Under the pieces are notes generated by a model that made no database searches, was not told where the DNA came from, and saw only the letters and a program-made list of their open reading frames with translations. Made by a program: the position numbers and the translations under genes. Of a stretch of 64,000 nucleotides of DNA, positions 281 through 53,776 are shown piece after piece. The stretch is from positions 157,448 to 221,447 of the IMG/VR virus record IMGVR_UViG_3300022921_000002; one strand, written 5' to 3'. Positions within the stretch are counted from its first letter, which is position 1. Each line of letters starts with the position of its first letter.

Positions 281-1028
281 GTATTATATAATTTATACTA
301 ATGATAACCTATCAAAACAATACGCAAATGATGCTGCCGAGCAATGTAAAAAGCTTGGAGTAAATTATGAGTTATACGAAGGATGGAAACCACAAGGTGG
401 TCCTGGTCAAATGTGGAGAAAGTTTACCGCTGAAACAGGAATTCCAATCAAATCATTTAAAAGAATGATGGTTGGTGCTCATGGTTGTATGGCTTCTCAT
501 TTACAATTATGGCAAAGGATTGTTCAGAATAAAGAATGTGCTGTTATATTAGAACACGATGGGATGATGCTTCATAAAGTAAAGTTGGATATTCCTGATA
601 ACAAAATCGTTGCGTTAGGATACAAATATAGAGAATGGGAAAACTATGACTATAAAACCGCAGGTCAACCCGAAAGAATTAAAGATGTGAAATTTCATCC
701 AGGTTCTCATGCGTATGCTATTACACACATTACCGCGCAGAAAATGATTGATGAAGTAACAAAGGTAGGTGTTACCGAGGCAATTGATAATCGTTGGTTT
801 ATGAGCAGTCGGAAAAATTTTACTAAAATACCAATGGCTATTTGTGATCCTATAGCAGCAATTGGGTGGTTAAGATTATCAACTATTCAGAAATATAGTG
901 CCACTCATAATAATCATGCCGAAATGTTAGAATCTTTTAAGAACAACTTTAAAGGTCAGCTAAAGGAATCAATCGTTATACCCAAAGGGTCTGTAAATAT
1001 TATAAATAGAAACAAAATCAGAGAATAG
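267..1028 (+). CDS. Glycosyltransferase family 25-like protein
   Basis: GCMASHLQLW...VILEHDG and GSHAYAI motifs typical of GT25. Confidence 0.7.
   Translation: MKVNKYYIIYTNDNLSKQYANDAAEQCKKLGVNYELYEGWKPQGGPGQMWRKFTAETGIPIKSFKRMMVGAHGCMASHLQLWQRIVQNKECAVILEHDGMMLHKVKLDIPDNKIVALGYKYREWENYDYKTAGQPERIKDVKFHPGSHAYAITHITAQKMIDEVTKVGVTEAIDNRWFMSSRKNFTKIPMAICDPIAAIGWLRLSTIQKYSATHNNHAEMLESFKNNFKGQLKESIVIPKGSVNIINRNKIRE
1001..1008 (+). promoter_or_regulatory. T4-type late promoter
   Basis: TATAAATA about 30 nt upstream of the ATG at 1038. Confidence 0.7.
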
Positions 1029-1037: not shown

Positions 1038-4000
1038 ATGGCAGACGAAAGCAATAAGGACAAAAAGAAAAAGGTTAAGGGATTTAAAGAATTTGATCCT
1101 GGAAACTATATTGATATTGAACCTACTATCAATGAAGCAAAAGTAGGCGAGGTTGTTATTTCTTGGGGACGTATGAACCCTATTACAACTGGGCACGAAA
1201 AACTTATCAATAGAGTTTTAAATGTAGCAAAATCAAAGAATGCTATTCCTGCTGTATTTTTAACACATTCTCAAGATAAAACAAAAAATCCATTGTCATA
1301 TAATGATAAGATCAAATATGCCGAGGTAGCATTTGGTAAAATCATTAAAAGATCAACTGCCAAGACAATCATTCAATTAATGCAGCAGTTACAAAAGAAA
1401 TTTAAAAAGGTAACTCTCGTTGTTGGTTCTGACCGATATAAAGAGATGGATACATTGCTTAACAAATACAATGGTAAAGAATATAAATTTGATGAAATAG
1501 AAGTTGTATCCGCAGGTGCTAGAGATCCTGACGCTGAAGGTGTTAAAGGAATGTCAGCATCAAAAATGCGTGAGTATGCTGTTTCAGATAATATCAAAAA
1601 GTTTACTACAGGATTACCTAGTAAGCTAAAAACAAGCGCGGCCGACATTATGGCCAGCATTAAAAAGGGAATGGGAATGTCGGAAGAATATAACGAAGAT
1701 AACTTTATCGAAGAAGATGAATTAGACGAAGCTTTGACTCGACAGCAGCGTATTAAACGCGGCCGTCAAATGCGAAGAATGCGTGTTAAAATGAAACGAG
1801 GTCGGGAAAAGGCAAAGCGGCGCCGTGCCAATATTGATGTTTTGAAAAGAAGATCAAGAAAAGCAGCACGTAATATAATTAAAAAGCGTCTTGCTGGTAA
1901 TAAACGATATGCTGATATGGAGCCTGCGGAAAAGGAACGTATTGATAAACGCATTGAAAAGATTTCAAAACAACGTATTGATAACCTGGCAATTAAATTG
2001 TTACCTTCTGTTAAAAAGAAAGAACGTGAGAGATTACAAGCACGTCATAATAAGAATGAGTCTGTTGATCTGAATGAGATGTGGGGTGCATATGTAACTA
2101 AGCGACCACATATGCTTATGGATAAAAACAACAAACCAAAGTTTGATAAACGGTTTAAGATGTTTAAACCTAAACAAGTTACAGAGATGAATGAGTTTGA
2201 TATTGAAGATATCGTTGAACTTATGGAATCAGTTGAAAAATTTACCGAAACAACAGGTAAATATTACACAGGTGTTGCTAAAAATAAGAAAGATGACCGT
2301 GAAGATCATTTTGAACGTAATGCTAAAAAGGCTGATGATGATCCTTCAGCATATAGGCCAGCACCAGGTGATAAAGAAGCAAAGACAAAAGAATCAAAGC
2401 ATACAAAAAAAGCACGAGCGATGGGTTACACTGAAGAATTTGATTTTTTAGGTGAAGATGCCGCAGGCAAATCATTAGCTGATAAAGCAAAGAAATCTGA
2501 CATGCCTGCAGGGATTTTACGTAAAGTATATAACCGTGGTGTTGCCGCATGGAAAACAGGTCACCGCCCAGGAACAACACCTGAACAATGGGGACATGCT
2601 CGAGTAAATTCATTTATTACTAAATCCTCTGGTACATGGGGTAAGGCTGATAAAGACCTTGCTGCAAAGGTTAATGAATCAGTAGAAACAGTTAATGAAG
2701 TTAGGAGAAACGCTATGGCTGCCAAGCCTAAGAACACTAAAGCAGAACGTGAGAGTAGACTAGCACAGAATATGAAAAAATTAAAGGATATGCGTAAATC
2801 TGATAAGTCTTGGGGTAAATCAAGCGCATTTGATTATCACGAGGAAGTAGAACTTGACGAATTAACAGCAGCTGAGAAAAAGCTAGTAAATCAAATGTAT
2901 GATAAAAAAGGCAACCTCACACCACATGGTAAAAAAGTAATGAACCACGGTAAGAAAAAAGGTGATAAAGGTTTTGTTGAATCGTTAGATGATAAGTTTG
3001 AAGCATTCATCTCACTTAATGAAGCCGCAACGCCTCAAATGAAAAAGGCAGCTGCAAGTATCGAAGCATATGCAAAGAAAAGCGGTGGCATTGATAAAGC
3101 AGACTTTATGAAAGCAGCAAAGATGCTATCATCTGGTAATGCTGGTATAAAATTCGTTAAATTTGTAGATGATCTTGATACAGAACCACGCGAATGGTTA
3201 ATCACTAATCTTGCTAAGACTATGGGTAAACAAACAGTTGAAAAAATGTTTAAAGTTAAAATCCGTGAAGAAGTAGAACTAGATGAAGCCGAAATGAGCC
3301 TATATGATAAAATAAAGGCAGCAAGAGCAAACCCATCACCAGACAAGCCTGCAAGAGGTCGTGGATCAAAAAATCGTAATCCAAAAACTTATGACCCACG
3401 CAAAGCACTAGACAAAGAAGATGATCGTCTTCAAGGTATGGTAAAGAAAAAATTGAAAAAAGAAGAGTTTGAACTTGATGAAGATCTTACACACCAGACA
3501 GTAAAGCCACCGAATCATACTAAAAAGTTTTCTGGGAAAGATTCTCGTGACACACAAGACACATCGGCGAATGAGTGGGATGCGCCAGGTAATAAGCGTC
3601 ATACTGTAACGAGTAGTCAAGCAGATGCTCATGATAAAACTGCTGCACATCACAATGAGGTTGCGGATGCTCATACAAAGGCAGGCGAAAAATCTTCTAG
3701 TCCAACTTTACAAAGATTGCATCACCAAGCCTCAGTCCATCATAAGAAGGCAGCAGAAGCACACTTTAATGCTTCTCATTCTAGTTCAGGTGCAGATAAA
3801 GATGGTTCTATTCAAAAAAAGGCAAAGGATCTGCATATGGCATACCATCTAACTATGCATGCTAACAAGATGTCTCAAGAAGTAAGAAATAAGGGTTCTA
3901 AAGCAAAGCGTATCCTTGAAGAAGTAGAAGAGCTTGATGAAGATGCTAAAATGAAAAAGCAATCTGATGATAACCTAAAAAGTTTACATAAGCAATTCAA

Positions 4001-4301
4001 AGGTCAAGATCAAAAAATGCCATCAACTCAGCATATGATGAAGCGTATCACTAAAGAAATGAAACGCCGTAATATGGGTGAGTCTGAAGAAGCAGCAAAG
4101 TTAGCATCTGTTGCTAACGGTGGTGTTCAGGATAAAGAAGATAAATTTAGAAATGCATTAAACCGTGTTCGTAATAAAAAATCAATGAAAGATGAAAGCT
4201 CTTGTGGATCATCAAAGAAAAGAAATGAAGAAGCTGGCGCAGGCGAAGAAGGTACAGCTAAATTAGTTAAAAGACTAAAGAAGGATACACCTAATGCATA
4301 G
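1038..4301 (+). CDS. Putative head-packaged polyprotein: N-terminal HxGH-type (cytidylyl/adenylyl)transferase domain plus about 10 basic modules separated by acidic [LIV]xE linkers
   Basis: WGRMNPITTGHEKL...VVGSDR...MSASKMRE nucleotidyltransferase motifs; repeated EEVELDE/EEFELDE/xLNE linkers; late promoter. Confidence 0.7.
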   Translation: MADESNKDKKKKVKGFKEFDPGNYIDIEPTINEAKVGEVVISWGRMNPITTGHEKLINRVLNVAKSKNAIPAVFLTHSQDKTKNPLSYNDKIKYAEVAFGKIIKRSTAKTIIQLMQQLQKKFKKVTLVVGSDRYKEMDTLLNKYNGKEYKFDEIEVVSAGARDPDAEGVKGMSASKMREYAVSDNIKKFTTGLPSKLKTSAADIMASIKKGMGMSEEYNEDNFIEEDELDEALTRQQRIKRGRQMRRMRVKMKRGREKAKRRRANIDVLKRRSRKAARNIIKKRLAGNKRYADMEPAEKERIDKRIEKISKQRIDNLAIKLLPSVKKKERERLQARHNKNESVDLNEMWGAYVTKRPHMLMDKNNKPKFDKRFKMFKPKQVTEMNEFDIEDIVELMESVEKFTETTGKYYTGVAKNKKDDREDHFERNAKKADDDPSAYRPAPGDKEAKTKESKHTKKARAMGYTEEFDFLGEDAAGKSLADKAKKSDMPAGILRKVYNRGVAAWKTGHRPGTTPEQWGHARVNSFITKSSGTWGKADKDLAAKVNESVETVNEVRRNAMAAKPKNTKAERESRLAQNMKKLKDMRKSDKSWGKSSAFDYHEEVELDELTAAEKKLVNQMYDKKGNLTPHGKKVMNHGKKKGDKGFVESLDDKFEAFISLNEAATPQMKKAAASIEAYAKKSGGIDKADFMKAAKMLSSGNAGIKFVKFVDDLDTEPREWLITNLAKTMGKQTVEKMFKVKIREEVELDEAEMSLYDKIKAARANPSPDKPARGRGSKNRNPKTYDPRKALDKEDDRLQGMVKKKLKKEEFELDEDLTHQTVKPPNHTKKFSGKDSRDTQDTSANEWDAPGNKRHTVTSSQADAHDKTAAHHNEVADAHTKAGEKSSSPTLQRLHHQASVHHKKAAEAHFNASHSSSGADKDGSIQKKAKDLHMAYHLTMHANKMSQEVRNKGSKAKRILEEVEELDEDAKMKKQSDDNLKSLHKQFKGQDQKMPSTQHMMKRITKEMKRRNMGESEEAAKLASVANGGVQDKEDKFRNALNRVRNKKSMKDESSCGSSKKRNEEAGAGEEGTAKLVKRLKKDTPNA

Positions 4302-5441: not shown

Positions 5442-5786
5442 ATGTATAGTTTTTCAGAACATAGTCTTATTGAACACGTTGAGGCACATCTCATTGAGAA
5501 TGATCTTGTACTTGATAATATAGATGACGAACAACTTGACGAAATCATCGGTATGGCCGCAAAGGCTGTAGGGGCAGTTGCTAAGGTAGGTGCAAAAGGT
5601 GTTCGACGAGCATTAACAAATAAACAAGGTCAATTCCGTTTATCAACTGCTGGGCGTAATACGGCACGTGCTAATAAAGCAAAACGTATTAATGATAGAG
5701 CAAATGCTATCCGTGATAGAAAAACCACAAAGGCGAATATTGACAAGGCCAGAGAAAACTTACGCAAAGCAAGAGAGGGAAAATAA
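5442..5786 (+). CDS. Putative internal head protein (acidic propeptide plus basic domain)
   Basis: Acidic N-terminal part ending QLDE, then an Arg/Lys/Ala-rich domain. Confidence 0.55.
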   Translation: MYSFSEHSLIEHVEAHLIENDLVLDNIDDEQLDEIIGMAAKAVGAVAKVGAKGVRRALTNKQGQFRLSTAGRNTARANKAKRINDRANAIRDRKTTKANIDKARENLRKAREGK

Positions 5787-5787
5787 A

Positions 5788-6351
5788 ATGGACACGAATA
5801 CAGTTAGAGAAGCAATTATTGATGCCCTCGGTCGAGTAGGTGAACTCGACGAAAAGAAAATGGATCCAGTGGGGCAGGCTGACGCAGATATTGATAACGA
5901 TGGAGACGTTGATAATTCAGATGAATATCTTCACAAACGTCGCAAAGCTATCAAAAAGGCTATGAAAGAAGAGCAAGAAGCTCGCTTAAATGAAGCAACA
6001 GCTATGACTGCTGGGCCAAAAGGTAGCTTAGGCGGAATTGGTAAAAAACCATCTATGCCTGCTCCTGGAGATAGTAAAAGAACTATTAATGCTCCAAAAG
6101 GAACCGCACGTCATCATGCCGATATGGCAGCAAAACATCAGCAGTCAGCTGAGCATCACGGAAGAAGAGCATCTGAACATGAGGATGAAGGAAATGATGA
6201 TAAAGCAGATCATCATTATGATAAAATGCAACATCACGATAATGCGGCTGATGCGCATCAGCATGCACAAGATATGATTAAGAAACACGGTTCCGATCAT
6301 CCTGAAGCTCAAAAAGCATCTAAAGAAGCTAATAAGCATAAATTATCATAA
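5788..6351 (+). CDS. Putative internal head protein with EF-hand-like loop and His-rich C-terminus
   Basis: ATG 5788 after GAGG; ELDE and RLNE sites; DADIDNDGDVDNSDE loop; dense His repeats. Confidence 0.55.
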   Translation: MDTNTVREAIIDALGRVGELDEKKMDPVGQADADIDNDGDVDNSDEYLHKRRKAIKKAMKEEQEARLNEATAMTAGPKGSLGGIGKKPSMPAPGDSKRTINAPKGTARHHADMAAKHQQSAEHHGRRASEHEDEGNDDKADHHYDKMQHHDNAADAHQHAQDMIKKHGSDHPEAQKASKEANKHKLS

Positions 6352-7085: not shown

Positions 7086-8222
7086 ATGGTCGTTGATCTA
7101 TTTTTAGTTTACCAATTCATCCGCCGTTTGGCTACACCATTTAATAAGTGGGAAGCATATAAGCAAGGTATTATTGATAAAGATGGTAAAGTATTAATCA
7201 AATCAAAAGATTTTACAAAAGGTTCTCAACGTAAAGCGTGGGGAATTTTTGATAGAATGATTGCTAACCTTAAAAAGTTGTTGGCAAAGGTACCTGGCGG
7301 TAGTTCTCAGTTTGCATCATATGCTGCCGCATTGTTTCTAATTAAAGAATACAAACATTTTACCGATGAATCATTACTAAATGAAGAATGGACTGATGAA
7401 CAATTAGATGAATCAATGCATTTATTTCATATTAGATATAATCATTATACCATACTCTCCGAAAATGTCAATGGTTATTTTGATGAACTTGATGAAAAAC
7501 TTAAAGCATCAGATGATATGGGTGTGTGGGTAAAAGATTTTCAGAAATCAGATGCACCACAATTCAAAGGCAAATCTCAAAAGAAAAGACAACAAATGGC
7601 CGTTGCTGCAAAGCTTGACGCAATGGATGAAGAATTACAAGAAGGCGCATTTAAAAGAATAGCACAAGTGCAATCAAATAAAGCAGATCGTATGGCTTCA
7701 AACGACAAAAAAGGTTTGGATACGTATAAGAAAAAACCAAAAACTGAAATTAAAGAAGCTGCTTCTCCACGTTGGAAAAAAGCTGGACCAAACGGCGAAA
7801 TACAAGCCACTATTGGTGGAAAGAAATATCAAATAGAAAAATCCTTAGATCACAATGAACGCCATAAAGGTGAGTGGAAAGTTATGGTTTGGGATAAGCG
7901 TAGAAACAGCTGGGAGTGGGAAACCACTGAGTACGGTAAAGCCAACGCTAAAGATTGGATTATGGATAGACTAAAAGAATCAGCTACTAATATGCGTAAT
8001 ATAAAACTTGTTAATAAAATCAAGAAGTCTGGTGTTGTAAAATCTGGTTCTATGTCACAGAATGATCCCAAAAAATCTGTTGATACAAAACCTGAAATTA
8101 CAGAAGAAATGCCAGCCAATGCAGTAAGTACCGGTGCAATTGCTAATATGGATGCGTCGGGAATTGATAACAAAAAGAAAAAGAAAAAGATTAAGGATAT
8201 GATGAGGAGAACCCTACAATGA
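7086..8222 (+). CDS. Conserved N-terminal domain plus modular basic segments; second putative processed head protein
   Basis: TPFNKWEAYKQGIIDKDG N-domain; QLDE, ELDE, ELQE, EIKE, RLKE and ITEE boundaries. Confidence 0.55.
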   Translation: MVVDLFLVYQFIRRLATPFNKWEAYKQGIIDKDGKVLIKSKDFTKGSQRKAWGIFDRMIANLKKLLAKVPGGSSQFASYAAALFLIKEYKHFTDESLLNEEWTDEQLDESMHLFHIRYNHYTILSENVNGYFDELDEKLKASDDMGVWVKDFQKSDAPQFKGKSQKKRQQMAVAAKLDAMDEELQEGAFKRIAQVQSNKADRMASNDKKGLDTYKKKPKTEIKEAASPRWKKAGPNGEIQATIGGKKYQIEKSLDHNERHKGEWKVMVWDKRRNSWEWETTEYGKANAKDWIMDRLKESATNMRNIKLVNKIKKSGVVKSGSMSQNDPKKSVDTKPEITEEMPANAVSTGAIANMDASGIDNKKKKKKIKDMMRRTLQ

Positions 8223-9076
8223 TTACTATAGAGCAATTTAGCGCTATGATCCCAACTAACAAAGATCCACAACCGTGGTTTGATGCGGCAGTGGAAAAGT
8301 TTGATGAATATAACATTAATACTCCAAATAGAATTGCAGGCTTTATGGCACAGTGTGCTCATGAGTCAGCAGACTTTACACGTTTAACTGAAAACCTTAA
8401 CTATTCGGAAAAAGCATTGAACTCGGTGTTTAGTCGCTATTTCGGAAAAGGAAAACGAAATGCTAAAGAATACGCTCGAAACCAGGAAAAGATTGCAAAC
8501 TATGTCTATCAAGACGAGTTTAGATCCAAGCGAGGAGCTTTGGGAAACACTGAACCCGGGGATGGCTGGCTATTTAGGGGTAGAGGTATCAAACAGCTTA
8601 CGGGCAGAAATAATTACGCGGCTTTTGGAAAGTCCGTTGGAATGTCAGCCGAGGAAGCTGCAGAATATGTAGCAACACCAAAAGGTGCTATTGAGTCAGC
8701 ATGCTGGTTCTGGGCATCTAATAAACTCGACAAATATGCCGATAATGGTGATAATGTGGGGTTGACAAAAAAGATTAATGGTGGTACAATTGGATTAGAT
8801 GACCGTAACCGTCGTTGGGAATCAGCCTTAGCCATCCTCGGTGGTGAAATGCCTGCACCTAAAAAAGCAGCACCTAAGAAAGCTGCAGGTGTGCGTACAC
8901 TACGCAAAGGTATGAAAGGTGATGACGTTGCTAAAATGCAAAAGGCAATTGGTGTAGGAGCTGATGGCGATTTTGGATTTGGAACTCTTACTGCTGTTAA
9001 AAAATGGCAAAAGATGAACGGATTGGTTGCAGATGGTATTGTAGGTCCTGCTACACAAGCAAAGATGTTTAAATAA
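8219..9076 (+). CDS. Endolysin, GH19 (chitinase-like) domain plus C-terminal peptidoglycan-binding domain
   Basis: AQCAHES, ENLNYS, FRGRGIKQLTGRNNY, INGGTIGLDDR; C-terminal LRKGMKGDDV...ADGIVGPAT. Confidence 0.9.
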   Translation: MITIEQFSAMIPTNKDPQPWFDAAVEKFDEYNINTPNRIAGFMAQCAHESADFTRLTENLNYSEKALNSVFSRYFGKGKRNAKEYARNQEKIANYVYQDEFRSKRGALGNTEPGDGWLFRGRGIKQLTGRNNYAAFGKSVGMSAEEAAEYVATPKGAIESACWFWASNKLDKYADNGDNVGLTKKINGGTIGLDDRNRRWESALAILGGEMPAPKKAAPKKAAGVRTLRKGMKGDDVAKMQKAIGVGADGDFGFGTLTAVKKWQKMNGLVADGIVGPATQAKMFK

Positions 9077-29586: not shown

Positions 29587-30704
29587 AGATAATTATGAAT
29601 ACCGAATCAATCTATAAACGCGATTCAAAAGAAGCAATCCGTGTATGGTTTGGTGAAGTAGGAGTAGATGGTGATACCTATGGTTGGCGCAGTACAGCAG
29701 GTTTGTTGGACGGCAAAAAAGTCACGTCAGGTTGGAAAATAGTTGAGCAAAAAAATGTCGGTAAGGCAAATGAAACCTCACTTGAGGAACAGGCTGTATC
29801 TGAAATGAACTCAGACTATGATAAAAAACTTGAACGTGGCTATTTCAAAACCATTGCTGATATTGATAAATTCACTAAGATCAAACCAATGTTGGCTGCA
29901 AAGTATGAAGATGTTACAATTAACTTTGAAACTCAAAGATATTATACTCAACCAAAATTAGATGGTATTCGGTGTATTGCTCGAGCGGATGGATTGTGGT
30001 CTCGTGGGTTTAAAGAAATCATTAGTGTACCTCATATCCATGAAAGTTTAAAATGGTATTTTGATAAACATCCTGATGCTATTCTTGATGGTGAGTTATA
30101 CAACCATGACCTCCGTGAAAACTTTAATAAGATCACATCGTTGGTCCGCAAAACAAAACCAGAACCTTGGGACATTAAAGACTCAAAAAGATTGGTAGAA
30201 TATCACGTTTATGATCTAATCAGTTCAAATGAAGTATTTTCAAAACGAATTGATGAATTATGCCTATTGGAATTTGACCCGTGTATTCAAGTTGTTAAAA
30301 CAGAAGAAGTACATAGCTTTGAAGAAATTGACGCTAAATATGGTGGATACCTTGAAGCAGGTTACGAAGGACAAATGGTCCGTGCTGATAATGTTTACCA
30401 ACAAAACAAACGGTCAAAGTTTTTACTTAAACGTAAAGAGTTTCTAACTGATGAGTTTACAGTTATCGGTGTTGAAGAAGGTAAAGGTAATTGGTCAGGA
30501 CATATCAAACGGTTTATCCTTGAATTAAAAGATGGTACTCAATTTGGTGCAGGTGTACGTGGCAATCAAGCATTACTTAAAGAAATGTATAACAACAGTG
30601 ATAAACCTAATTGGTGTACTTTACGTTACTTTGCACCAACACCTGATGGCATTCCAAGGTTTCCTGTAGTAATTGATTGGGGAAACGGCGTTCGTGAGGA
30701 CTGA
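29583..30704 (+). CDS. ATP-dependent DNA ligase
   Basis: PMLA, QPKLDGIRC, LDGELY, YEGQMVR, LLKRK, GIPRFP. Confidence 0.92.
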   Translation: MKIIMNTESIYKRDSKEAIRVWFGEVGVDGDTYGWRSTAGLLDGKKVTSGWKIVEQKNVGKANETSLEEQAVSEMNSDYDKKLERGYFKTIADIDKFTKIKPMLAAKYEDVTINFETQRYYTQPKLDGIRCIARADGLWSRGFKEIISVPHIHESLKWYFDKHPDAILDGELYNHDLRENFNKITSLVRKTKPEPWDIKDSKRLVEYHVYDLISSNEVFSKRIDELCLLEFDPCIQVVKTEEVHSFEEIDAKYGGYLEAGYEGQMVRADNVYQQNKRSKFLLKRKEFLTDEFTVIGVEEGKGNWSGHIKRFILELKDGTQFGAGVRGNQALLKEMYNNSDKPNWCTLRYFAPTPDGIPRFPVVIDWGNGVRED

Positions 30705-30731
30705 CATAAATAACTCTATCAAAGGAGTTAT
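30705..30731 (+). promoter_or_regulatory. Late promoter overlapping an RBS-sequestering hairpin
   Basis: CATAAATA 30705-30712; stem ATAACTCT (30710-17) pairs with GGAGTTAT (30724-31), which contains the SD. Confidence 0.6.
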
Positions 30732-30734
30732 ATT

Positions 30735-31157
30735 ATGTGGTTTCATAAAGGTGAAGAATTTACCTCAGAAATGATTAAAGACTATATTGGATTTGTTTAC
30801 TGTATTACGGACAAATCCAATGATAAGAAATACATTGGCAAAAAATTGCTAATGTCAAAAAGGCGCCTACCACCTCTTAAAGGTAAAACCCGTCGACGTA
30901 TTAAAATCGTTGAGACTGATTGGCAAAAATATTATGGTTCATCTGAAGAAGTCAAACTGATGGTTGAAGAAAAAGGCGCCGACAATTTTCATAGAGAAAT
31001 ACTACACCTATGCCATAAGAAAGGTGAGCTCGGATATTTAGAACTCCGGGAGCAAATCTTACGTGATGTTTTATTGCGTGACGATTATTATAATGGAATT
31101 GTCCAAGCAAAAATTCACCGAAACCACATAAAGTCATTGACATATCTTATAGAATAG
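30735..31157 (+). CDS. GIY-YIG family endonuclease
   Basis: GFVYCITDKSNDKKYIGKK...YYGSS...YYN. Confidence 0.8.
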   Translation: MWFHKGEEFTSEMIKDYIGFVYCITDKSNDKKYIGKKLLMSKRRLPPLKGKTRRRIKIVETDWQKYYGSSEEVKLMVEEKGADNFHREILHLCHKKGELGYLELREQILRDVLLRDDYYNGIVQAKIHRNHIKSLTYLIE

Positions 31158-31180
31158 ATTATTATAGTCTAGAATCACAA
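31137..31180 (+). promoter_or_regulatory. Early sigma70-type promoter
   Basis: TTGACA 31137, 17 nt, TATTAT; AGAATCA at 31171. Confidence 0.6.
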
Positions 31181-31190
31181 GGAGATACCA

Positions 31191-31421
31191 ATGATTATCA
31201 AACGCAAATCAGCATACACCGGTCTTACTCGGTCAAAGGATATTCCTGTTGACCCACAAGGCTGGGCAATGTATCAGTCAGGTTACGGCAGTGTTGATGA
31301 ATGTCTTCCGTATCTTACTGATGAAGACCGTGACTTTATTTTGTCAGGTATGATGCCTGATGAATGGAACACTGCTATCAGTGCCGAACTAAAACTAATT
31401 GTGGAAGATACTTTTATATGA
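31191..31421 (+). CDS. Hypothetical protein
   Basis: AAGGAG RBS; PYLTDEDRDFILSG motif. Confidence 0.55.
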   Translation: MIIKRKSAYTGLTRSKDIPVDPQGWAMYQSGYGSVDECLPYLTDEDRDFILSGMMPDEWNTAISAELKLIVEDTFI

Positions 31422-32101
31422 TATTCCTATTTAACGGACCACCCAAATCAGGCAAAGATGCTGCCGCTGATTATTTTAAAGAAAAAGGTTATAAGCACCT
31501 TTCTTTTAAATATCAGTTATATAAAGAAACTTGTAATTACTTTGGATGTAATTATGATTGGTTCATGGAACGATATGACGACCGCTTAGTAAAAGAAGTA
31601 CCTCATATGGATATCGGACATATGTCTTGCCGTGAAGCAATGATCTATGTTTCTGAAATAGTTGTCAAACCAAGAAAAGGTTTGGATTACTTTGGTTTGC
31701 AGGTGGCAAATGAAATTGATTTATCAAAGGATTATGCTATCTCAGATGGCGGTTTTGTTGACGAATTAAAACCTGTTATAAATACTATTGGTTCCGATAA
31801 TTTTATCTTGGTCCAATTGACTCGCGATGGATGTGACTATTCAACCGATTCAAGACGGTATTTTAATGGTAAAGTTGTAGAAGAAATTGTTAACTCTTAT
31901 GCAACACCAATCCAGGCCAAATATGTTTTAGATTATAAGTTTGATGTTAAAACGTACAGGATACATAATAATGGCACGCTCGGAGCTTTTCATAGTGCAT
32001 TAGAAAATATTTATGAAAAGGAAGTAACATATAAAAATGTCAAAGAGCAAAAGTTCAAATGCGACCAAGAAGGAAAAATACTCGAGTCGGATATTCTATG
32101 A
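31418..32101 (+). CDS. Deoxynucleoside monophosphate kinase-like P-loop protein
   Basis: FNGPPKSGKD, HLSFK, ISDGGF. Confidence 0.7.
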   Translation: MIFLFNGPPKSGKDAAADYFKEKGYKHLSFKYQLYKETCNYFGCNYDWFMERYDDRLVKEVPHMDIGHMSCREAMIYVSEIVVKPRKGLDYFGLQVANEIDLSKDYAISDGGFVDELKPVINTIGSDNFILVQLTRDGCDYSTDSRRYFNGKVVEEIVNSYATPIQAKYVLDYKFDVKTYRIHNNGTLGAFHSALENIYEKEVTYKNVKEQKFKCDQEGKILESDIL

Positions 32102-32279
32102 AAATCCATATGACATTGAAACATTTTTCGAAGCTCTTGGTATCGCAGCCGACCACGGTAAAGAATTGCAATACGTAGATCAATTTATTGCACGTATGAA
32201 ATCTGAACCGACGAATGATACGGCAACCACCTGCTTTGAAATCTTAAGAGATTTTGAACTGATTAAATTTGAAGATTAA
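32037..32279 (+). CDS. Hypothetical protein
   Basis: Intact ORF overlapping the upstream gene end. Confidence 0.45.
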   Translation: MSKSKSSNATKKEKYSSRIFYENPYDIETFFEALGIAADHGKELQYVDQFIARMKSEPTNDTATTCFEILRDFELIKFED

Positions 32280-32305
32280 CTAAACTAAAATAGAAAGATT
32301 ATATT

Positions 32306-32557
32306 ATGGACAAGAATGAAATTATTAATGCACTTAAAGTCGGTGTATGCGAAATTACTTTCACAAAAAAGAATGGTGATGAGCGACTAATGTTTGCAAC
32401 ACTCAGTGAAGAGATGTTGCCACCTCAAAAAGATATTGAGGAACAAATCCAAAAGAAAAAACCTAACAGTGATGTTCTCGCGGTTTATGACGTGAAGGCA
32501 CCAGGATGGCGTTCTTTTCGTTGGGATTCATTAAAAGAATTTACAAAAGGAGTTTAA
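32306..32557 (+). CDS. SH3/WYL-like small protein (DUF2693-like)
   Basis: ITFTKKNGDERLMFATL...VYDV...GWRSFR. Confidence 0.65.
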   Translation: MDKNEIINALKVGVCEITFTKKNGDERLMFATLSEEMLPPQKDIEEQIQKKKPNSDVLAVYDVKAPGWRSFRWDSLKEFTKGV

Positions 32558-32560
32558 TAA

Positions 32561-33520
32561 ATGAGCTGTATCTATAAAGGTGTGGTTGAGGAGTCTGAAC
32601 TATCAGGTAAATCCAAAGGTGGTACTGAAATGATGAGAGCACGCCTTATGGACGGAGTAGATCCTGCACTGTTGCAGGAATATGCTATCCACTTGTCACG
32701 TCCGCGTGATATGAAAGGTGATGTTAAAAATATCCTATGGTGCCATGATCTTGCCGAGGATCCTGAAAACAAAATTCTAAAAGAAAAAGGTTGGAATAAT
32801 TTTGACCATATTGTTTTCGTTTCACAATGGCAACGAGATCAGTATATCACTTATTATGGTATACCGCACTCAATGTGCTCGGTAATTCCTAATGCTATTG
32901 AAAAGGATTACAAACCTTCGGAAGAAAAAGATTATGAAACTATTCGTTTTGTATATCATACAACTCCGCACCGTGGTTTGGAATTACTTATTCCTATCTT
33001 TGAACAATTAGCAAAAGAATTTGATAACATCCATCTTGATGTGTTTTCGTCATTTGGTATATATGGTTGGGGTCATAGAGATGAACCTTACCAACCGTTG
33101 TTTGATAAAATTGAAGCACATCCTAAGATGACTTATCATGGATCGGTAAATAACCGTCTTGTATTGGATACATTGGATAAATCTCATATTTTCCTATATC
33201 CAAATACATGGAAAGAAACATCTTGCATCTCGTTAATTGAGGCAATCAAATCAGGTTTGGTTTGTATTCACCCCAACCTTGGCGCACTTACTGAAACCGC
33301 AAGCGGTGCAACAATTTCTTATGATTTCCATGAGAATGCCACACAACATGCGAACGTAGCATATTCTGTCGCAAAAGGTGTACTTAATATGCAACAATCC
33401 GATCCTGACTTTATTCGCCGTTTCACAACAAGTGATAGGTTCAATTTAGCCAGAAATAATATAAATACTTTTACAACAACATGGACACAGCTCCTACGAG
33501 CATTGGCAGTAAATGACTGA
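32561..33520 (+). CDS. GT-B glycosyltransferase (GT4-like)
   Basis: GGTE, LWCHD, FVSQWQ, VIPNAI, PHRGL, ETSCISLIEA. Confidence 0.8.
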   Translation: MSCIYKGVVEESELSGKSKGGTEMMRARLMDGVDPALLQEYAIHLSRPRDMKGDVKNILWCHDLAEDPENKILKEKGWNNFDHIVFVSQWQRDQYITYYGIPHSMCSVIPNAIEKDYKPSEEKDYETIRFVYHTTPHRGLELLIPIFEQLAKEFDNIHLDVFSSFGIYGWGHRDEPYQPLFDKIEAHPKMTYHGSVNNRLVLDTLDKSHIFLYPNTWKETSCISLIEAIKSGLVCIHPNLGALTETASGATISYDFHENATQHANVAYSVAKGVLNMQQSDPDFIRRFTTSDRFNLARNNINTFTTTWTQLLRALAVND

Positions 33521-33872
33521 CAACATCATAGAATTCCCTAAAGTCAATACAAACGTCGAGTCTTTGACGAAAGAACAGTTGCGTTCAGTACTTGACGAGT
33601 ATAAAGAAGAAGTAGCTAATGAAATGTCGGAATTTTTGTTTCGGCACGTCATTGGTGAATTAACAAGGGTGGGGCATAGCTTTGATAAAAATATGGAATA
33701 TTTTATGCCTTCTATGATGATGGTCCTAGAATCAATAAGGTCGTTAGCTTTACAGGCACACGGAATTGAGCACGACTTTCAATCAATCGCAAAAGATATA
33801 CTTGAAATTGAAACAAAAGATATTAACAGTTTTAAAGAAAAAATGGTTGACATTGAGGAAGAGTTAGATTAA
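33513..33872 (+). CDS. Hypothetical protein
   Basis: DNIIEFP N-terminus; coupled ORF. Confidence 0.5.
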   Translation: MTDNIIEFPKVNTNVESLTKEQLRSVLDEYKEEVANEMSEFLFRHVIGELTRVGHSFDKNMEYFMPSMMMVLESIRSLALQAHGIEHDFQSIAKDILEIETKDINSFKEKMVDIEEELD

Positions 33873-33910
33873 TATAGTTTATATAAATCAAATTGAAATG
33901 AGAAAACACA

Positions 33911-34771: not shown

Positions 34772-34775
34772 TAAG

Positions 34776-35204
34776 ATGGCAAAAAAATTAGCAATTTCAG
34801 AAATCATTTCTGAGCTCGGTAATATGGGTAAACCTGAAGAAAAGATTGAGTGGTTGCTGAAAAATGATTCGCAACCACTCCGTGAAATCTTACGGTTGAC
34901 TTATGACAAATCAGTTAAGTGGTTACTACCTGACACTGCTCCGCCTTGGAAAGAAAACGAATATGAAGATGAAGCACGTTTGATGCTTTACCGTGAAATG
35001 CGGCGTATGAAAATCTTTCTTGAAGGTGGCGGATATGACAATTTGAATCAAGTCAAAAGAGAAGGTTTATTCATAAGTTTGCTTGAAGATATATATAATG
35101 AAGATGCCAAACTTTTGGCCAACTATGTTATAGCACAAAAATCATTTAAAGGACTGCGTAAGTCAACCGTAGTCAAAGCATTTCCTGATCTAATAAAAGA
35201 GTAA
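34776..35204 (+). CDS. Conserved hypothetical protein
   Basis: KREGLFISLLE...AFPDLI pattern recalled from marine T4-like phages. Confidence 0.55.
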   Translation: MAKKLAISEIISELGNMGKPEEKIEWLLKNDSQPLREILRLTYDKSVKWLLPDTAPPWKENEYEDEARLMLYREMRRMKIFLEGGGYDNLNQVKREGLFISLLEDIYNEDAKLLANYVIAQKSFKGLRKSTVVKAFPDLIKE

Positions 35205-46265: not shown

Positions 46266-46344
46266 TTTCTTTTTAAATCAAATTAACTATTGACATTTGG
46301 TTTAGAATCAGTTATATTATTAATATAACAAATGAAAAGGAATC
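46262..46344 (+). promoter_or_regulatory. Early promoter element with stem-loop and TTAA-N7-TTAA
   Basis: TTAA 46262, N7, TTAA 46273; TTGACA 46290, 17 nt, TATATT 46313; GAATC at 46305 and 46340. Confidence 0.8.
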
Positions 46345-46348
46345 AGTT

Positions 46349-46678
46349 ATGACAACTCAAACTCAAAAATTTTGGAAAGAAACACCACTTGCAAACGTAG
46401 CTTCATTAGTCGCAACTTTTCGTGGTTACGCTGCCCAGGAGGCTGATCTTGCTGATCTGTATAATTCAGACGCAGATGATTTTCATAAAGCAATTGTTCT
46501 TTTTCGTCAGTCGGACTCTGAAGGTCTTTCACAATACGTTTCAGAAATGGATACTTCTGCTCGTGAAGACTTGGTTGAAGCTTTTTGGTTTGACTGTGGT
46601 AACGATTTCGTTGAAAATGTTCTTGGTTTTTCAATGAGTAAATCTTGGATTAGAGAGAATACTCAGCAAGCTGCATAA
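46349..46678 (+). CDS. Hypothetical early protein, similar to a module of the 1038-4301 polyprotein
   Basis: YA...DxxDFxKA...VxxxDTxxRExL shared pattern. Confidence 0.6.
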   Translation: MTTQTQKFWKETPLANVASLVATFRGYAAQEADLADLYNSDADDFHKAIVLFRQSDSEGLSQYVSEMDTSAREDLVEAFWFDCGNDFVENVLGFSMSKSWIRENTQQAA

Positions 46679-50797: not shown

Positions 50798-51763
50798 TTA
50801 TTTCAAATGTGTTTTAGCATTAAGAGCCTCGACGAGAGCATTAACTGTATAATAATCCGATGCAGGTTTAGCTACAACGGTATCTTCTACAATGATTTCG
50901 TCTTCCTCAACATTAGCATCTTCCGTTACGGCTTTTGCTTCTGCAAAGAATGATTCCTTAAGAGTATTAAGGTTTGCGGTGTACTCTTCGATATTATTAA
51001 AATCGAGCTTTTCAGCAAGAACCTTCATTCTTTCCTGTTGGGTCAGAGTAAGATCCTCAGTGACTTCTGCGAACACTTTTCCGGCTTGCAAAGAAGTGAT
51101 CTCTTTTTGCAATGCAATGTTCTCGTCAATACGAGTATTTGCATCAGTTTTCAATCCTTCAACTTCTTCTTCAAGCTCAGCAACAACATCAATGGTATCT
51201 TCATTGATTGCAATGTTGTGCTCTTCAAAAAGTCCTTTCAGACCGTCCATCAACGATTCTGCCATTTCAACCTTAATGCCGGCTTCGATAGCAACTTCGT
51301 TTTCTGTCATCCACTCTTCTACAACATAGTCGAGATAGGAATCTAGGTTTTCAACAAGGCCATTGACAGTTGAGTCAATTGAAGATTTCATTTCTTCATC
51401 AAGCTGTGTTGAATATTCTTCATTCATTTTGGCAGCTTTTGCCGCAGCACTTTCATTTACTGCTGCTTCAAATACCAAAGTTACTTTTGATTTAAACTCT
51501 TCTGAAAGATCCATGCCTTCAAACATTGCTGAGATTGATTCGTCAAGTTCAACGACTTCTTCTACAACAACTTCTGCATCAGCAGATTCTGCATCTTCTT
51601 TCATTCCAGGTGTTACTGCTGCAATTTTTTCAGGTGTTGGATCAACCTTCTTTGCTACATCAGCCTTGTGTTTTTTTGCCGTACCGCCTTTTGGTGTAAC
51701 AGGATCTTCAACTGAAGAAACACCATCGTCGGCTACAAACTTTTCTTGTAGTTCATCTGACAT
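50798..51763 (-). CDS. Prohead core scaffold protein (gp22-like)
   Basis: Acidic coiled coil; LSEEFKSK, FEAAV, YLDYVVEEWM; synteny. Confidence 0.92.
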   Translation of the reverse strand: MSDELQEKFVADDGVSSVEDPVTPKGGTAKKHKADVAKKVDPTPEKIAAVTPGMKEDAESADAEVVVEEVVELDESISAMFEGMDLSEEFKSKVTLVFEAAVNESAAAKAAKMNEEYSTQLDEEMKSSIDSTVNGLVENLDSYLDYVVEEWMTENEVAIEAGIKVEMAESLMDGLKGLFEEHNIAINEDTIDVVAELEEEVEGLKTDANTRIDENIALQKEITSLQAGKVFAEVTEDLTLTQQERMKVLAEKLDFNNIEEYTANLNTLKESFFAEAKAVTEDANVEEDEIIVEDTVVAKPASDYYTVNALVEALNAKTHLK

Positions 51764-51811: not shown

Positions 51812-52513
51812 TCATTTTCTGAGTGATTCGATAAATTTATTCAACATAGCAGCTGCTTGTGCTTCATCAATCCGCTTGACAACTGTTTTGTATTGTGTTT
51901 CAACTTCTTGTTGAATTTCTTCAATCACTTCAGCAACCTGTTCTTGAACCTGCGCAGGCAACCAAGAAGATGAAGCAATGTCATAAAAGTATTCAACATT
52001 TTCCATAATACCATTTACGAAACAATTAGGGCCAGACGGATCGGTTACAACATCAACAGTAGCTAAATGGAAATCTGATTGAACTTCCATGATACCATCT
52101 TTTGTTGGTTTAACTGAACCAAGTCCACGTGTTGATACACCGACCTGAACTCCTTCGTCAATGAATGTCTTAACAATTTCACCCATTGGAGTACCAAGCA
52201 ATTTTGCTTTACCCATAAAGTTTGAACCATCTCTCCTCATTTCAGTAATCAAATGAGATACACGGTCGCCGTTTACGGTTGGTCCATCAGGGTGACCAAG
52301 TTCCCCAAGAGCTCGTTTGGTTTCAACAAAATCTTTATTGTATCGAACCATTTCTTTCTCAAGGATTTCGGATGGGTAACATCTACCGTTGCGATTGTTA
52401 ATGTCACCTTGCATAAAGATACCTTCAATGAAGTAGGACTTTTTGCCAGTTTCTTCATTTAATTCTGTGCTCGTTGAGGCACTTTCGTTAAAAATTTCTG
52501 TAATAAGTTTCAT
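51812..52513 (-). CDS. Prohead protease (gp21-like)
   Basis: MKLITE, IEGIFMQ, NRNGRCY, ALGELGHP, GVSTRGLGS, DVVTDPS. Confidence 0.96.
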   Translation of the reverse strand: MKLITEIFNESASTSTELNEETGKKSYFIEGIFMQGDINNRNGRCYPSEILEKEMVRYNKDFVETKRALGELGHPDGPTVNGDRVSHLITEMRRDGSNFMGKAKLLGTPMGEIVKTFIDEGVQVGVSTRGLGSVKPTKDGIMEVQSDFHLATVDVVTDPSGPNCFVNGIMENVEYFYDIASSSWLPAQVQEQVAEVIEEIQQEVETQYKTVVKRIDEAQAAAMLNKFIESLRK

Positions 52514-52567: not shown

Positions 52568-53776
52568 TTATTGAAGTGCTTCTCTTGCAAATCCTACAAT
52601 TTCGTCAAAACCTGCTTGATCTTTTTTCATAACGGATTCCATTTGTTTACGGTTTTTTGTATTCAAACCTTTAAACATTGAATTAAGCAATTTTGCATCT
52701 TGAGGTGAAATCCTAGTTGATTTACCGTTGTCAAATTTAAAATTACCAGATTTTACTGCTTCGTCAATCGTAGCTGCTTCATTTTTCTCCCAAGGGGCTT
52801 TTTTCAATGTGACTGCTTTTTTACCCTCTTTGGATGGCGCTGTTGCCTTATCCAATTCTTTTGCAAGTGCAGCACTTTGGCTTTCTTTAACACCACCGCC
52901 AAGAGCCTTTTTGATTAACTCATTTGCTTTAACTTTTTTGACTTCCGACATTTTATCCATGCCATGGTCATCTGTTTGTTTTGCTCTTGTTGTTCTCATA
53001 ACTGTGCGAGTTTTGCCATCAGGACCAGTCATAGTTACTGGTTTTTTTGTAGCAGCTTGAGTTGTTTCCTCAAGTTCTTCGCCCATTGACATTACTTCGG
53101 CTGTTGCATAACTGTAAAGTGTTTGCATTTCTTTTGCCACACCTGCCAATTTGTTTTGAAACCATTCTTCAGGATCTGATGTTTTTGACACATATGCCGC
53201 AATACCTTGCATTGCGTGTGACATTGAACGCAAAGCATTCATCATCATTGGCTTTTCTTCCATTGGGTTTTCAGCAAGATCAACATCTTCTTTCATAGAA
53301 TTTTTATATAGATCCAATGCTTTTGCATATTTTGGATTTTTCATCATACGTTTTGATTCACCGTGATCTGGATTATCGTGTGCCATACGGACCGTAGGCT
53401 CATCCAAGGAATGCTTTTTCATATGTTTCTTATATGCATCAAACTTCTTAGGATCGACGGTCTTGCCAAAGGATTTACTCATTGGTTTCATTGAACGTGA
53501 GATCTCATCAATTTGTTTTGCTTCTTCGCCTAACTTACGACCGCCACCTGCATCTGAACCAGTTTTCTTGATATATGCTGAGTCATATTTTGCATCGGTG
53601 CCATCATCGGCAGGGCGCTTTTTCATAGTTTTACCTTTGATTTCACCAGTAAAAACTGCGTCAGGTGCAACCGGGTGTTTAACTGTTTCAGCATCGTGCA
53701 TATCTTTAAAGCGATTATTTTCATCGGAGCGGTTATGCTTCGATACTTCAGCTAGTTTTTGTTTAAAAGACTTCAT
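52568..53776 (-). CDS. Modular prohead core / internal protein at the gp67-gp68 position
   Basis: Between portal and protease; MKSFKQKLAE N-terminus; QIDE, DLAE, ELEE and TIDE boundaries. Confidence 0.65.
   Translation of the reverse strand: MKSFKQKLAEVSKHNRSDENNRFKDMHDAETVKHPVAPDAVFTGEIKGKTMKKRPADDGTDAKYDSAYIKKTGSDAGGGRKLGEEAKQIDEISRSMKPMSKSFGKTVDPKKFDAYKKHMKKHSLDEPTVRMAHDNPDHGESKRMMKNPKYAKALDLYKNSMKEDVDLAENPMEEKPMMMNALRSMSHAMQGIAAYVSKTSDPEEWFQNKLAGVAKEMQTLYSYATAEVMSMGEELEETTQAATKKPVTMTGPDGKTRTVMRTTRAKQTDDHGMDKMSEVKKVKANELIKKALGGGVKESQSAALAKELDKATAPSKEGKKAVTLKKAPWEKNEAATIDEAVKSGNFKFDNGKSTRISPQDAKLLNSMFKGLNTKNRKQMESVMKKDQAGFDEIVGFAREALQ

What the first reader, a model, noticed from the sequence alone, without database searches (positions are those of the whole stretch)
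3024..3266. A polyprotein module has a stand-alone paralogue under an early promoter (46349-46678)
Seen: the module IEAYAKKSGGIDKADFMKAAKML...FVDDLDTEPREWL aligns by eye with FRGYAAQE...SDADDFHKAIVLF...YVSEMDTSAREDL, sharing YA, DxxDFxKA and VxxxDTxxRExL. One copy is late and putatively packaged; the other is free and sits directly behind an early promoter. Inference: the domain acts at the very start of infection, first delivered from the capsid and then newly synthesised. This supports the modules being functional effectors rather than scaffold filler.
Basis: partly seen in the sequence, partly recalled or inferred. Interest (0 to 1): 0.7.

Follow-up and report, generated by a model that had tools for sequence, protein, structure and literature searches.

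The report
Packaged-polyprotein module with early free paralogue
A small helical domain inside a late polyprotein of a marine T4-like phage, probably packaged in the capsid, does have a distant free-standing relative behind an early promoter, but the two copies differ enough that they probably do not do the same job.

Summary
Residues 663-743 of the 1087-aa protein (window 1038-4301) and the 109-aa protein (46349-46678) are distant homologues.

- **Homology.** BLASTP finds nothing. Family profiles match at hhalign probability 97.9%, E 5e-13. Each family's HMM picks the other as its only hit in the window. The whole 221-kb phage genome holds exactly these two copies.
- **Fold.** The AlphaFold models share the same helix order. 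Both have the same top hit among 2.3 million AFDB clusters.
- **Timing.** The free gene follows a TTGACA-N17-TATATT promoter kept in all 18 related loci. The polyprotein follows TATAAATA, as do the head genes.
- **Packaging.** This is inferred but well supported. The linkers (EEVELDE) copy a site in the scaffold protein. In a related phage the module sits in the protein encoded between portal and prohead protease. Homologous cytidylyltransferases occur in cyanophage virion proteomes.
- **Against a simple relay.** The module's invariant GGIDK loop is missing from the free copy. The free family is uniformly acidic (pI about 4.3), while the module is neutral to basic.

The closest precedent is T4 Alt (packaged) versus ModA/ModB (early). 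The domain has no known family or fold, and its biochemical function remains unknown.

The parts
1001..1008 (+). T4-type late promoter TATAAATA, 30 nt upstream of the polyprotein start codon
   Evidence: The same motif lies at the same distance upstream of gp23, gp22, gp21 and gp18, and upstream of polyprotein homologues in L023, L024 and L025. Genome-wide, 23 of 32 copies lie within 60 nt of an ORF start.
1038..4301 (+). 1087-aa polyprotein. It holds an N-terminal cytidylyltransferase (about residues 38-231), a basic segment, DUF5824 (408-540), the module, and three further segments separated by (D/E)L(D/N)E linkers.
   Evidence: Six of the 15 [DE]L[DN]E motifs in the whole genome fall in this one protein.
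1038..1136 (+). Possible N-terminal propeptide (residues 1-33), ending in the conserved ...EPT(I/L)(D/N)E|A site just before the enzyme domain
   Evidence: The N-termini of family members are aligned by eye. That this is a targeting or cleavage signal is inference.
3009..3020 (+). SLNE, an (I/L)xE-type putative prohead-protease site directly upstream of the module
   Evidence: The Glu is conserved in at least 90% of sequences in the module alignment (E13). An [LI]xE lies within 25 aa upstream in 71% of 167 module instances.
3021..3266 (+). The module (residues 662-743; predicted helices at 666-738), with the conserved signature YAKKSGGIDKxDFMKA ... LDTEPRE
3267..3287 (+). EEVELDE linker at the C-terminal edge of the module; putative prohead-protease site
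   Evidence: The same VELDE string occurs in scaffold gp22. Codons differ between linkers, so the constraint is on the peptide.
46290..46318 (+). Early (sigma-70-type) promoter TTGACA-N17-TATATT with the phage-specific TAGAATCAG spacer
   Evidence: It is conserved upstream of all 18 homologous loci. There are 20 such sites genome-wide, none before structural genes.
46336..46342 (+). Ribosome-binding site AAAGGAA, 6 nt before the ATG
   Evidence: It is conserved in related loci.
46349..46678 (+). 109-aa free paralogue: acidic (pI 4.2), five core helices plus two flanking helices
   Evidence: dN/dS is 0.28-0.59 against seven homologues.
51812..52513 (-). gp21-type prohead protease, the presumed processing enzyme
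   Evidence: phrog_207, E 1.7e-73. In the syntenic L026, Pfam Peptidase_S77 hits the gene in the matching position.
50798..51763 (-). gp22 scaffold protein carrying ...EEVVELDES..., the same motif as the polyprotein linkers
52568..53776 (-). 402-aa protein encoded between portal and protease, starting MKSFKQKLAE (like a T4 capsid-targeting sequence). Its orthologue in another phage carries the module.

Best explanation
The window belongs to a 221-kb marine T4-like myovirus. The two sequences are ancient paralogues of one small five-helix domain that has no described family.

**Late copy.** This copy is one cassette of a late-transcribed polyprotein. Its cassettes are separated by (I/L)xE sites of the kind the gp21 prohead protease cuts. 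Most likely the protein is taken into the prohead, cut into pieces, kept with the DNA and ejected into the next host. T4 handles Alt and the internal proteins this way.

**Early copy.** This copy is made in the cytoplasm from a strong early promoter. It keeps the fold and the helix-capping motifs (DxxDF.KA and DTxPRE). It has lost the cassette's invariant SGGIDK loop and has become strongly acidic.

The pair therefore resembles T4 Alt (late, packaged) versus ModA/ModB (early). The scaffold is related and both act in the first minutes of infection, but the activities have diverged and are not redundant.

Shown: homology, the shared predicted fold, the promoter motifs and their conservation, the linker motif and its enrichment, and the differences in charge and loop. 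Inferred: timing of expression, cleavage, packaging, ejection and any target.
For: Homology and fold:
- Profile-profile probability 97.2-97.9%, E 3.6e-11 to 5.4e-13, with shuffle controls.
- Reciprocal exclusive HMM hits in the window, and only two copies in the genome.
- The invariant residues of both families coincide at D37/D41, D40/D44, D65/D68 and T66/T69, plus the following P-R-E.
- Helix order matches. The module has H17-33, 35-49, 55-63, 66-80, 82-89. The free protein has H15-30, 32-53, 57-66, 69-83, 85-92.
- Both models have the same top AFDB cluster, A0A2D7XFQ3 (TM 0.74/0.89 for the free protein, 0.53/0.58 for the module). They also share the same ESM Atlas clusters.

Timing:
- The early promoter is conserved in 18 of 18 loci.
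- TATAAATA precedes the polyprotein here and in three related loci, and precedes the head genes.

Packaging:
- This is a T4-type head module with a gp21 protease.
- The linker motif is identical to a gp22 scaffold site, and the capsid protein has LLSE|AAPT.
- Six of 15 genome-wide [DE]L[DN]E motifs lie in this protein.
- Module boundaries are enriched 3-4 fold for the acidic site across 167 instances.
- P0103, the orthologue of the window's portal-protease intergenic protein (46% identity, E 7e-113), carries the module and sits between portal and protease in L026.
- Some short module-bearing proteins start MKSFKKYLGE or MELLEKYLGE.
- Cytidylyltransferases and kinases are repeatedly detected in cyanomyovirus virions (PMC10665884).
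- T4 gp21 cuts after Glu, for example Alt at ITE-6 and LTE-619 (PMC5694885).

Precedent: Alt is packaged and late, and ModA/ModB are its early paralogues (PMC5512222; PMC2988021).

Divergence:
- The free family has median pI 4.3 and net charge -11. The module is about neutral. The polyprotein segments have pI 8.2-11.7.
- The GGIDK loop is absent from the free family.

Co-occurrence: both genes are on one 210,790-bp TARA scaffold.
Against: - No transcript, protein or virion data exist for this phage.
- The polyprotein's N-terminus does not resemble the 10-residue T4 capsid-targeting sequence. Only a conserved (I/L)xE|A at residue 33 is present.
- (I/L)xE is a short motif, and 15 occur in the protein against about 8 expected by shuffling. 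Site assignment is therefore not proof of cleavage.
- The authors of the virion proteomics themselves warn that abundant cytoplasmic proteins may co-purify.
- The shared motifs sit at helix N-termini and may be purely structural, so they say nothing about a shared activity.
- No fold or family match gives a biochemical function.
Confidence: 0.5

Rival explanations
1. The free protein and the packaged cassette perform the same effector function on the same target. The injected copy acts before any gene expression, and the early gene then tops it up.
For: The homology, the opposite promoter classes and the plausible packaging are as in the best explanation. Both genes co-occur in a related genome. 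Five invariant positions are shared.
Against: The most conserved element of the cassette (G34, G35, I36, K38 of SGGIDK) has no counterpart in the free family, which has a six-residue-longer helix there. Net charge is inverted in every member. Identity is about 24%. Even in the T4 precedent, Alt and ModA differ in target range.
Confidence: 0.2
2. The cassette has no effector role. It is head-core or scaffold material, or a DNA-associated internal peptide that is cut up and largely discarded or serves packing. The early protein is an exapted copy of the fold with an unrelated cytoplasmic function.
For: The linkers match a site in the scaffold protein gp22, which T4 gp21 chops into fragments. In L026 the cassette sits in the gene at the position of the T4 core proteins gp67/gp68. 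The polyprotein segments are basic, as expected for DNA-associated filler.
Against: The cassette is a well-conserved autonomous domain with invariant non-structural-looking residues (GGIDK). It is found in 241 representative proteins and many architectures, next to enzymes (cytidylyltransferase, zeta/AAA_33 kinases). Filler would not be expected to keep such a signature.
Confidence: 0.17
3. The polyprotein is not packaged or cleaved at all. It is a late cytoplasmic multidomain enzyme, and the EEVELDE strings are merely flexible acidic linkers. The paralogue pair then has no link to capsid delivery.
For: No direct data on processing exist. The N-terminus is unlike the T4 capsid-targeting sequence. 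Neighbouring genes are glycosyl- and sulfotransferases and an endolysin-like protein, not head genes. The proteomics authors caution about co-purification.
Against: The linker is identical to the gp22 site. Codons vary but the peptide is fixed. The motif is enriched at cassette boundaries. The same cassette occurs inside a protein encoded within the head operon that has a T4-CTS-like start.
Confidence: 0.11
4. The resemblance is chance similarity between two lysine/aspartate-rich helical peptides.
For: BLASTP finds nothing. The single-sequence phmmer E-value is only 0.009.
Against: The profile-profile E-value is 5e-13 with shuffle controls. HMM hits are reciprocal and exclusive. Helix order is the same, and both models share the same nearest structural neighbour.
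Confidence: 0.02

Closest known systems
Phage T4 Alt versus ModA/ModB (paralogous ADP-ribosyltransferases)
   Same: One paralogue is made late, taken into the head, trimmed by gp21 at (I/L)xE and injected with the DNA. The others are early gene products. All act in the first minutes of infection, and the paralogues are only distantly similar.
   Different: The fold here is a small all-helical domain with no sign of enzymatic activity. The late copy is one cassette of a multi-cassette polyprotein, not a single protein. The conserved loop of the packaged copy is absent from the early copy, and the charge is inverted.
T4 internal proteins (IPI, IPII, IPIII) and core proteins gp67, gp68 and gp22
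   Same: These are late, head-internal substrates of the gp21-type protease cut after Glu. The internal proteins are a diverse, fast-evolving cargo. The window's 402-aa protein between portal and protease has an MKSFKQKLAE start, similar to my recollection of the T4 capsid-targeting sequence.
   Different: There is no sequence similarity to any T4 internal protein. The polyprotein gene lies outside the head operon, and its N-terminus differs from the T4 capsid-targeting sequence.
Polyvalent proteins of phages and conjugative elements (Iyer et al. 2017, PMC5512222)
   Same: Many unrelated domains are strung together in one late-encoded polypeptide that is proposed to be packaged and delivered with the DNA, sometimes after proteolysis.
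   Different: None of the hallmark domains of that class was detected (MuF, Tox-ART, metallopeptidase, DarB-type methylase-helicase, ParB-like). Processing here would be by the prohead protease at repeated linker sites, not by a built-in peptidase.
Virion-associated cytidylyltransferases and kinases of T4-like cyanophages
   Same: The N-terminal domain belongs to the same family (565 phage records match, mostly Synechococcus phages). Such proteins are found in virion proteomes.
   Different: No GenBank phage record contains the module or the free paralogue, apart from records of this genome or its near relatives, which the tool may withhold. Both are known only from uncultured marine contigs.

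Membership tests
T4-type head-internal (ejection) proteins processed by the gp21 prohead protease | Encoded by a phage with a gp21 (Peptidase S77) protease and a T4-type head module | tested here: met
   gp23, gp22, gp21, gp20, gp19, gp18 and gp17 homologues lie at 49.4-59.5 kb on the minus strand. In the syntenic locus, Peptidase_S77 hits the gene in the matching position.
T4-type head-internal (ejection) proteins processed by the gp21 prohead protease | Late transcription | tested here: inconclusive
   TATAAATA lies 30 nt upstream and is conserved in three related loci and before the head genes. This is a motif only. No RNA data exist.
T4-type head-internal (ejection) proteins processed by the gp21 prohead protease | N-terminal capsid-targeting sequence ending in (I/L)xE | tested here: inconclusive
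   A conserved ...EPT(I/L)(D/N)E|A lies at residue 33, but it does not resemble the 10-residue T4 sequence. Other module-bearing proteins do start MKSFKKYLGE or MKKFSQIISE.
T4-type head-internal (ejection) proteins processed by the gp21 prohead protease | Cleavage after Glu in (I/L)xE, and presence in mature virions | not testable with these tools
   Indirect only: the linker is identical to the gp22 site, the motif is enriched, and homologues occur in cyanophage virion proteomes.
Alt/ModA/ModB-type pair (packaged plus early paralogues) | The two proteins are homologous | tested here: met
   hhalign probability 97.9%, E 5.4e-13, and reciprocal HMM hits.
Alt/ModA/ModB-type pair (packaged plus early paralogues) | Opposite temporal classes | tested here: inconclusive
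   The promoter motifs of the two classes are conserved across relatives. Transcription was not measured.
Alt/ModA/ModB-type pair (packaged plus early paralogues) | Shared functional (active-site) residues | tested here: not met
   The cassette's invariant G34, G35, I36 and K38 loop is absent from the free family. Only helix-cap positions are shared.
Polyvalent proteins (Iyer et al. 2017) | Two or more distinct domains in one late, packaging-associated polypeptide | tested here: met
   The protein holds a cytidylyltransferase, DUF5824, the module and further segments.
Polyvalent proteins (Iyer et al. 2017) | Presence of the class's hallmark domains (MuF, ART, MPTase, DarB-like, ParB-like) | tested here: not met
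   A Pfam scan at E <= 1 gives only PF19141 and PF01467.
Any described protein domain family or solved fold | A significant match to Pfam, NCBIfam, PHROGs with a function, PDB sequences or PDB folds | tested here: not met
   Searches found nothing. The only structural neighbours are uncharacterised proteins.

The most novel reading that the evidence does not exclude
Marine T4-like phages carry a previously undescribed cargo system. It would be a late polyprotein of interchangeable cassettes (enzymes plus small helical domains) separated by prohead-protease sites, which is cut up inside the head and ejected with the DNA. For at least this cassette, the phage also keeps a charge-inverted early copy. 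That copy may act as an intracellular partner, successor or antagonist of the injected cassette, for example by competing for the same host or phage ligand or by displacing basic internal proteins from the incoming DNA.
Probability: 0.2. Interest if true: 0.75.

Novelty: new variant of a known kind. Interest (0 to 1): 0.5.

Why it matters
The proteins that phages carry in the capsid and inject with their DNA are the first weapons used in an infection. Outside T4, P1 and a few jumbo phages they are almost unknown, and abundant ocean phages are among the least studied.

This locus gives a concrete, testable case. A conserved but undescribed domain is found in at least 241 representative proteins. 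It travels as a cassette between head-associated polyproteins, and it has an early-expressed relative in the same genome.

If cleavage and packaging are confirmed, three things follow:
- The EEVELDE-type linkers would give a sequence rule for finding injected cargo in uncultured T4-like phages.
- It would explain why cytidylyltransferases and kinases keep turning up in cyanophage virions.
- The Alt/Mod logic (inject one paralogue, express another) would extend to a non-enzymatic fold.

If it is not confirmed, the result is still a new domain superfamily with two well-defined branches.

Tried and rejected
- **Pairwise BLASTP** of the two proteins found no significant alignment. It is too insensitive here and was superseded by the profile comparisons.
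- **GenBank phages.** Megablast with the window and tblastn with either protein found no match. The family is known only from uncultured contigs.
- **PDB fold searches** (Foldseek, and VIA-align over the wide set), BFVD and AFDB gave only generic helical-bundle matches (best Z 6.0, E > 0.1). The exception is one uncharacterised 91-aa protein.
- **Profile searches of PDB sequences** gave no usable match for the free family. The module profile gave a 26-residue local match to uteroglobin fusion constructs (E 6.6e-5, with no single stretch passing). No fold search supports it, so I treat it as a helix-cap coincidence.
- **NCBIfam** added nothing. The ESM Atlas feature search gave only unnamed viral clusters below the reliable score.
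- **Complex prediction** of cassette plus free protein returned no answer (score 0.01). This is no evidence either way.
- **Contexts of short stand-alone module proteins** (P0227, P0236) were on contigs too short to inform.
- **Further pairs.** A jackhmmer search of the genome's ORFs with each polyprotein segment found only this module-to-free-protein pair.
- **DNA-level repeats.** I considered whether the linkers are recombination repeats and rejected it, because the codons differ between linkers.
- **Direct superposition** of the two AF2 models could not be done, because the model coordinates are not exposed.
Full report
**What the window is.** The 64-kb window is the last 64 kb (157448-221447) of a 221,447-bp virus record that is estimated to be complete.

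- It encodes a T4-type morphogenesis block on the minus strand. This comprises major head protein gp23, scaffold gp22, prohead protease gp21, portal gp20, tail tube, sheath and large terminase.
- The capsid protein is 64-67% identical to those of Sinorhizobium phages phiM12 and phiN3, Stenotrophomonas phage DLP_6, Synechococcus phage S-WAM1 and the Methylophilales Melnitz phages.
- GC content is 35-42%.
- No GenBank phage matches at the DNA level.

- Window 3024-3266 is residues 663-743 of the 1087-aa ORF 1038-4301.
- Window 46349-46678 is a 109-aa ORF.
- All quoted motifs are present.

At the single-sequence level the similarity is marginal.

- BLASTP reports nothing.
- A gapped Smith-Waterman alignment scores 48. 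Shuffles average 24 +/- 4.6, giving p about 0.001-0.004.
- phmmer with filters off gives E 0.009 against the genome's 273 ORFs.

With homologues the picture is clear.

- The module has 112 relatives in long proteins. It occurs in 241 representative proteins overall.
- The free protein has 57 clusters of relatives.
- hhalign of the two family alignments gives probability 97.2%, E 3.6e-11. With the broader free-protein alignment it gives 97.9%, E 5.4e-13 over 75 columns.
- The real score was 63.4. Column-shuffled module profiles scored at most 17.7 and the reversed profile 13.2.
- Against all 606 six-frame ORF segments of the window, each family's HMM finds the other as its only non-self hit (E 9.5e-7 and 6e-5; next best 0.19 and 0.14).
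- A genome-wide search finds just these two copies.
- The positions invariant in both families coincide. These are the two Asp of DxxDF.KA and the Asp-Thr of DTxPRE, followed by P-R-E.

**Predicted folds.**

- AlphaFold2 with the family alignments gives a confident model for the free protein (pLDDT 91.4, pTM 0.82).
- The module model is fair (pLDDT 76 overall, 82-90 in the core).
- The helix order is the same. The module has helices at 17-33, 35-49, 55-63, 66-80 and 82-89. The free protein has helices at 15-30, 32-53, 57-66, 69-83 and 85-92. The second helix is longer in the free protein because of its six-residue insertion.
- I could not superpose the two models directly.
- Among 2.3 million AFDB clusters both models have the same top hit, an uncharacterised 91-aa protein (TM 0.74/0.89 for the free protein and 0.53/0.58 for the module).
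- In the ESM Atlas both hit the same 88-aa viral cluster and the same 95-aa cluster.
- No solved structure or named family matches either model.

**Promoters.**

- The free gene is preceded by TTGACA-N17-TATATT at 46290-46318 and by an AAAGGAA ribosome-binding site.
- The promoter belongs to a phage-specific family with a TAGAATCAG spacer.
- There are 20 strong sites genome-wide, none before structural genes.
- The promoter is present upstream of the homologue in all 18 related loci examined, down to 49% protein identity.
- The polyprotein is preceded by TATAAATA at 1001-1008, 30 nt from its ATG. The same motif at the same spacing precedes gp23, gp22, gp21 and gp18 here, and precedes polyprotein homologues in three other contigs.
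- That TATAAATA marks T4-type late promoters, and that sigma-70-like promoters mark early genes, is established knowledge of T4-like phages. Expression itself was not measured.

**Is the polyprotein packaged and cut?** The protein has an N-terminal cytidylyltransferase domain and DUF5824. Six (D/E)L(D/N)E strings divide it into segments. The points in favour are:

1. T4 gp21 cuts after Glu, for example Alt at ITE-6 and LTE-619 (PMC5694885).
2. The scaffold protein gp22 of this phage contains the same ...EEVVELDE... string, and the capsid protein has LLSE|AAPT.
3. Six of the 15 such strings in the whole proteome are in this one protein.
4. The linker peptide is fixed while its codons vary.
5. 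In 167 unique instances of the module from other proteins, an [LI]xE lies within 25 residues upstream in 71% and at the downstream edge in 81%. The acidic form is 3-4 times more frequent there than in random windows of the same proteins.
6. The window's 402-aa protein between portal and protease starts MKSFKQKLAE, which resembles the T4 capsid-targeting sequence (from memory, MKTYQEFIAE). Its orthologue P0103 (46% identity, E 7e-113) carries this very module. P0103 sits between portal and protease in another phage.
7. Cytidylyltransferases and kinases recur in virion proteomes of T4-like cyanophages, though the authors caution about co-purification (PMC10665884).

Against these points, the polyprotein's own N-terminus has only a conserved (I/L)xE|A at residue 33, not a T4-like signal. 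The gene also lies among transferase genes, not head genes. I rate packaging and cleavage at about two in three.

**How the two copies differ.**

- The module family's strongest signature is the SGGIDK loop between helices 1 and 2 (G34, G35, D37 and K38 invariant; I36 at 90% or more). In the free family only the Asp has a counterpart. There the segment is replaced by a longer stretch with its own invariant Tyr.
- All 30 free-family members are acidic (pI 4.1-4.9, median net charge -11). The module is about neutral, and every polyprotein segment after the 33-residue N-terminal stretch is basic (pI 8.2-11.7).
- The shared motifs sit at helix N-termini and could be structural caps.
- The free gene is under moderate purifying selection (dN/dS 0.28-0.59).
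- Both genes are present on one 210,790-bp TARA scaffold, so the pairing is conserved in at least one relative.

**Interpretation.** The best-supported reading is an Alt/Mod-like arrangement (PMC5512222; PMC2988021). One fold has one copy as late, protease-released capsid cargo and one copy as an early cytoplasmic protein, and the two have diverged in function.

- A scaffold or filler role for the cassette is made less likely by its conserved signature and its spread through many architectures next to enzymes.
- Chance similarity is excluded.
- A heterodimer test gave no answer.
- The biochemical function of the domain remains unknown.

**Novelty.** The domain has no Pfam, NCBIfam or PDB counterpart. 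Neither branch occurs in the GenBank phage collection searched. The logic of injecting one paralogue and expressing another is known from T4. Multidomain packaged proteins are known as polyvalent proteins. The variant here is a cassette polyprotein whose linkers copy prohead-protease sites, with one cassette having an early, charge-inverted relative. I searched the literature only partially and found no description of this architecture.

Noticed in passing
window 52568-53776 (-): A 402-aa protein between the portal and prohead-protease genes starts MKSFKQKLAE, like a T4 capsid-targeting sequence, and has several (I/L)xE sites. It has no PHROG hit. Its orthologue in L026 is 773 aa because extra cassettes are inserted, including the module.
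   Followed up: partly
G000:C1:152350-153579 (+), about 5 kb upstream of the window: A 409-aa ORF starts MKKFSTLLNE|A. This is another capsid-targeting-like N-terminus, so it is possibly another packaged protein.
   Followed up: no
window 5668-6351 (+): A 227-aa protein shares a His-rich helical segment with polyprotein residues 816-912 (BLASTP E 0.002). It also carries a DIDNDGDVD...YLHKRRKA motif. That motif occurs next to the module in other phages' proteins (P0215, P0118), so cassettes are reused across genes.
   Followed up: partly
window 48163-48588 and 48581-48988 (+): The two halves of one kinase family (phrog_10255, positions 2-118 and 124-229 of 230) lie in two ORFs that overlap by 8 nt. 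The same two-ORF split is seen in related contigs L001-L003. It is therefore a conserved split or a programmed frameshift, not a sequencing error.
   Followed up: no
window 44973-45005, 46287-46319, 46682-46714, 35865-35893; also genome-wide: The early promoters share an extended motif of about 33 bp (CTATTGACA..TG.TTTAGAATCAG.TATATTA). The conserved TAGAATCAG in the spacer is unexplained.
   Followed up: partly
window 46319-46348 and homologous loci L002, L006-L016: The 5' untranslated leader of the free gene (ATTAATATAACAAATGAAAAGGAATCAG) is almost invariant across loci whose proteins are only 63-75% identical. This may be a regulatory RNA element or a translational operator.
   Followed up: no
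window 3200-3260 (module residues about 703-729): The module profile gives a 26-residue local match (E 6.6e-5) to uteroglobin fusion constructs in the PDB, across the DTxPRE helix. No fold search supports it.
   Followed up: partly
G000:C1:7792-17151 (-) and 29675-40675 (-): Two giant ORFs of 3119 and 3666 aa, each with TATAAATA 26-33 nt upstream, lie elsewhere in the genome.
   Followed up: no
window 8219-9076 (+): A 285-aa endolysin-like protein (phrog_181, E 4e-73) with a C-terminal region matching further endolysin families lies about 4 kb downstream of the polyprotein, in the same strand block. It may be virion-associated, since endolysins were found in the S-CREM2 virion proteome.
   Followed up: no
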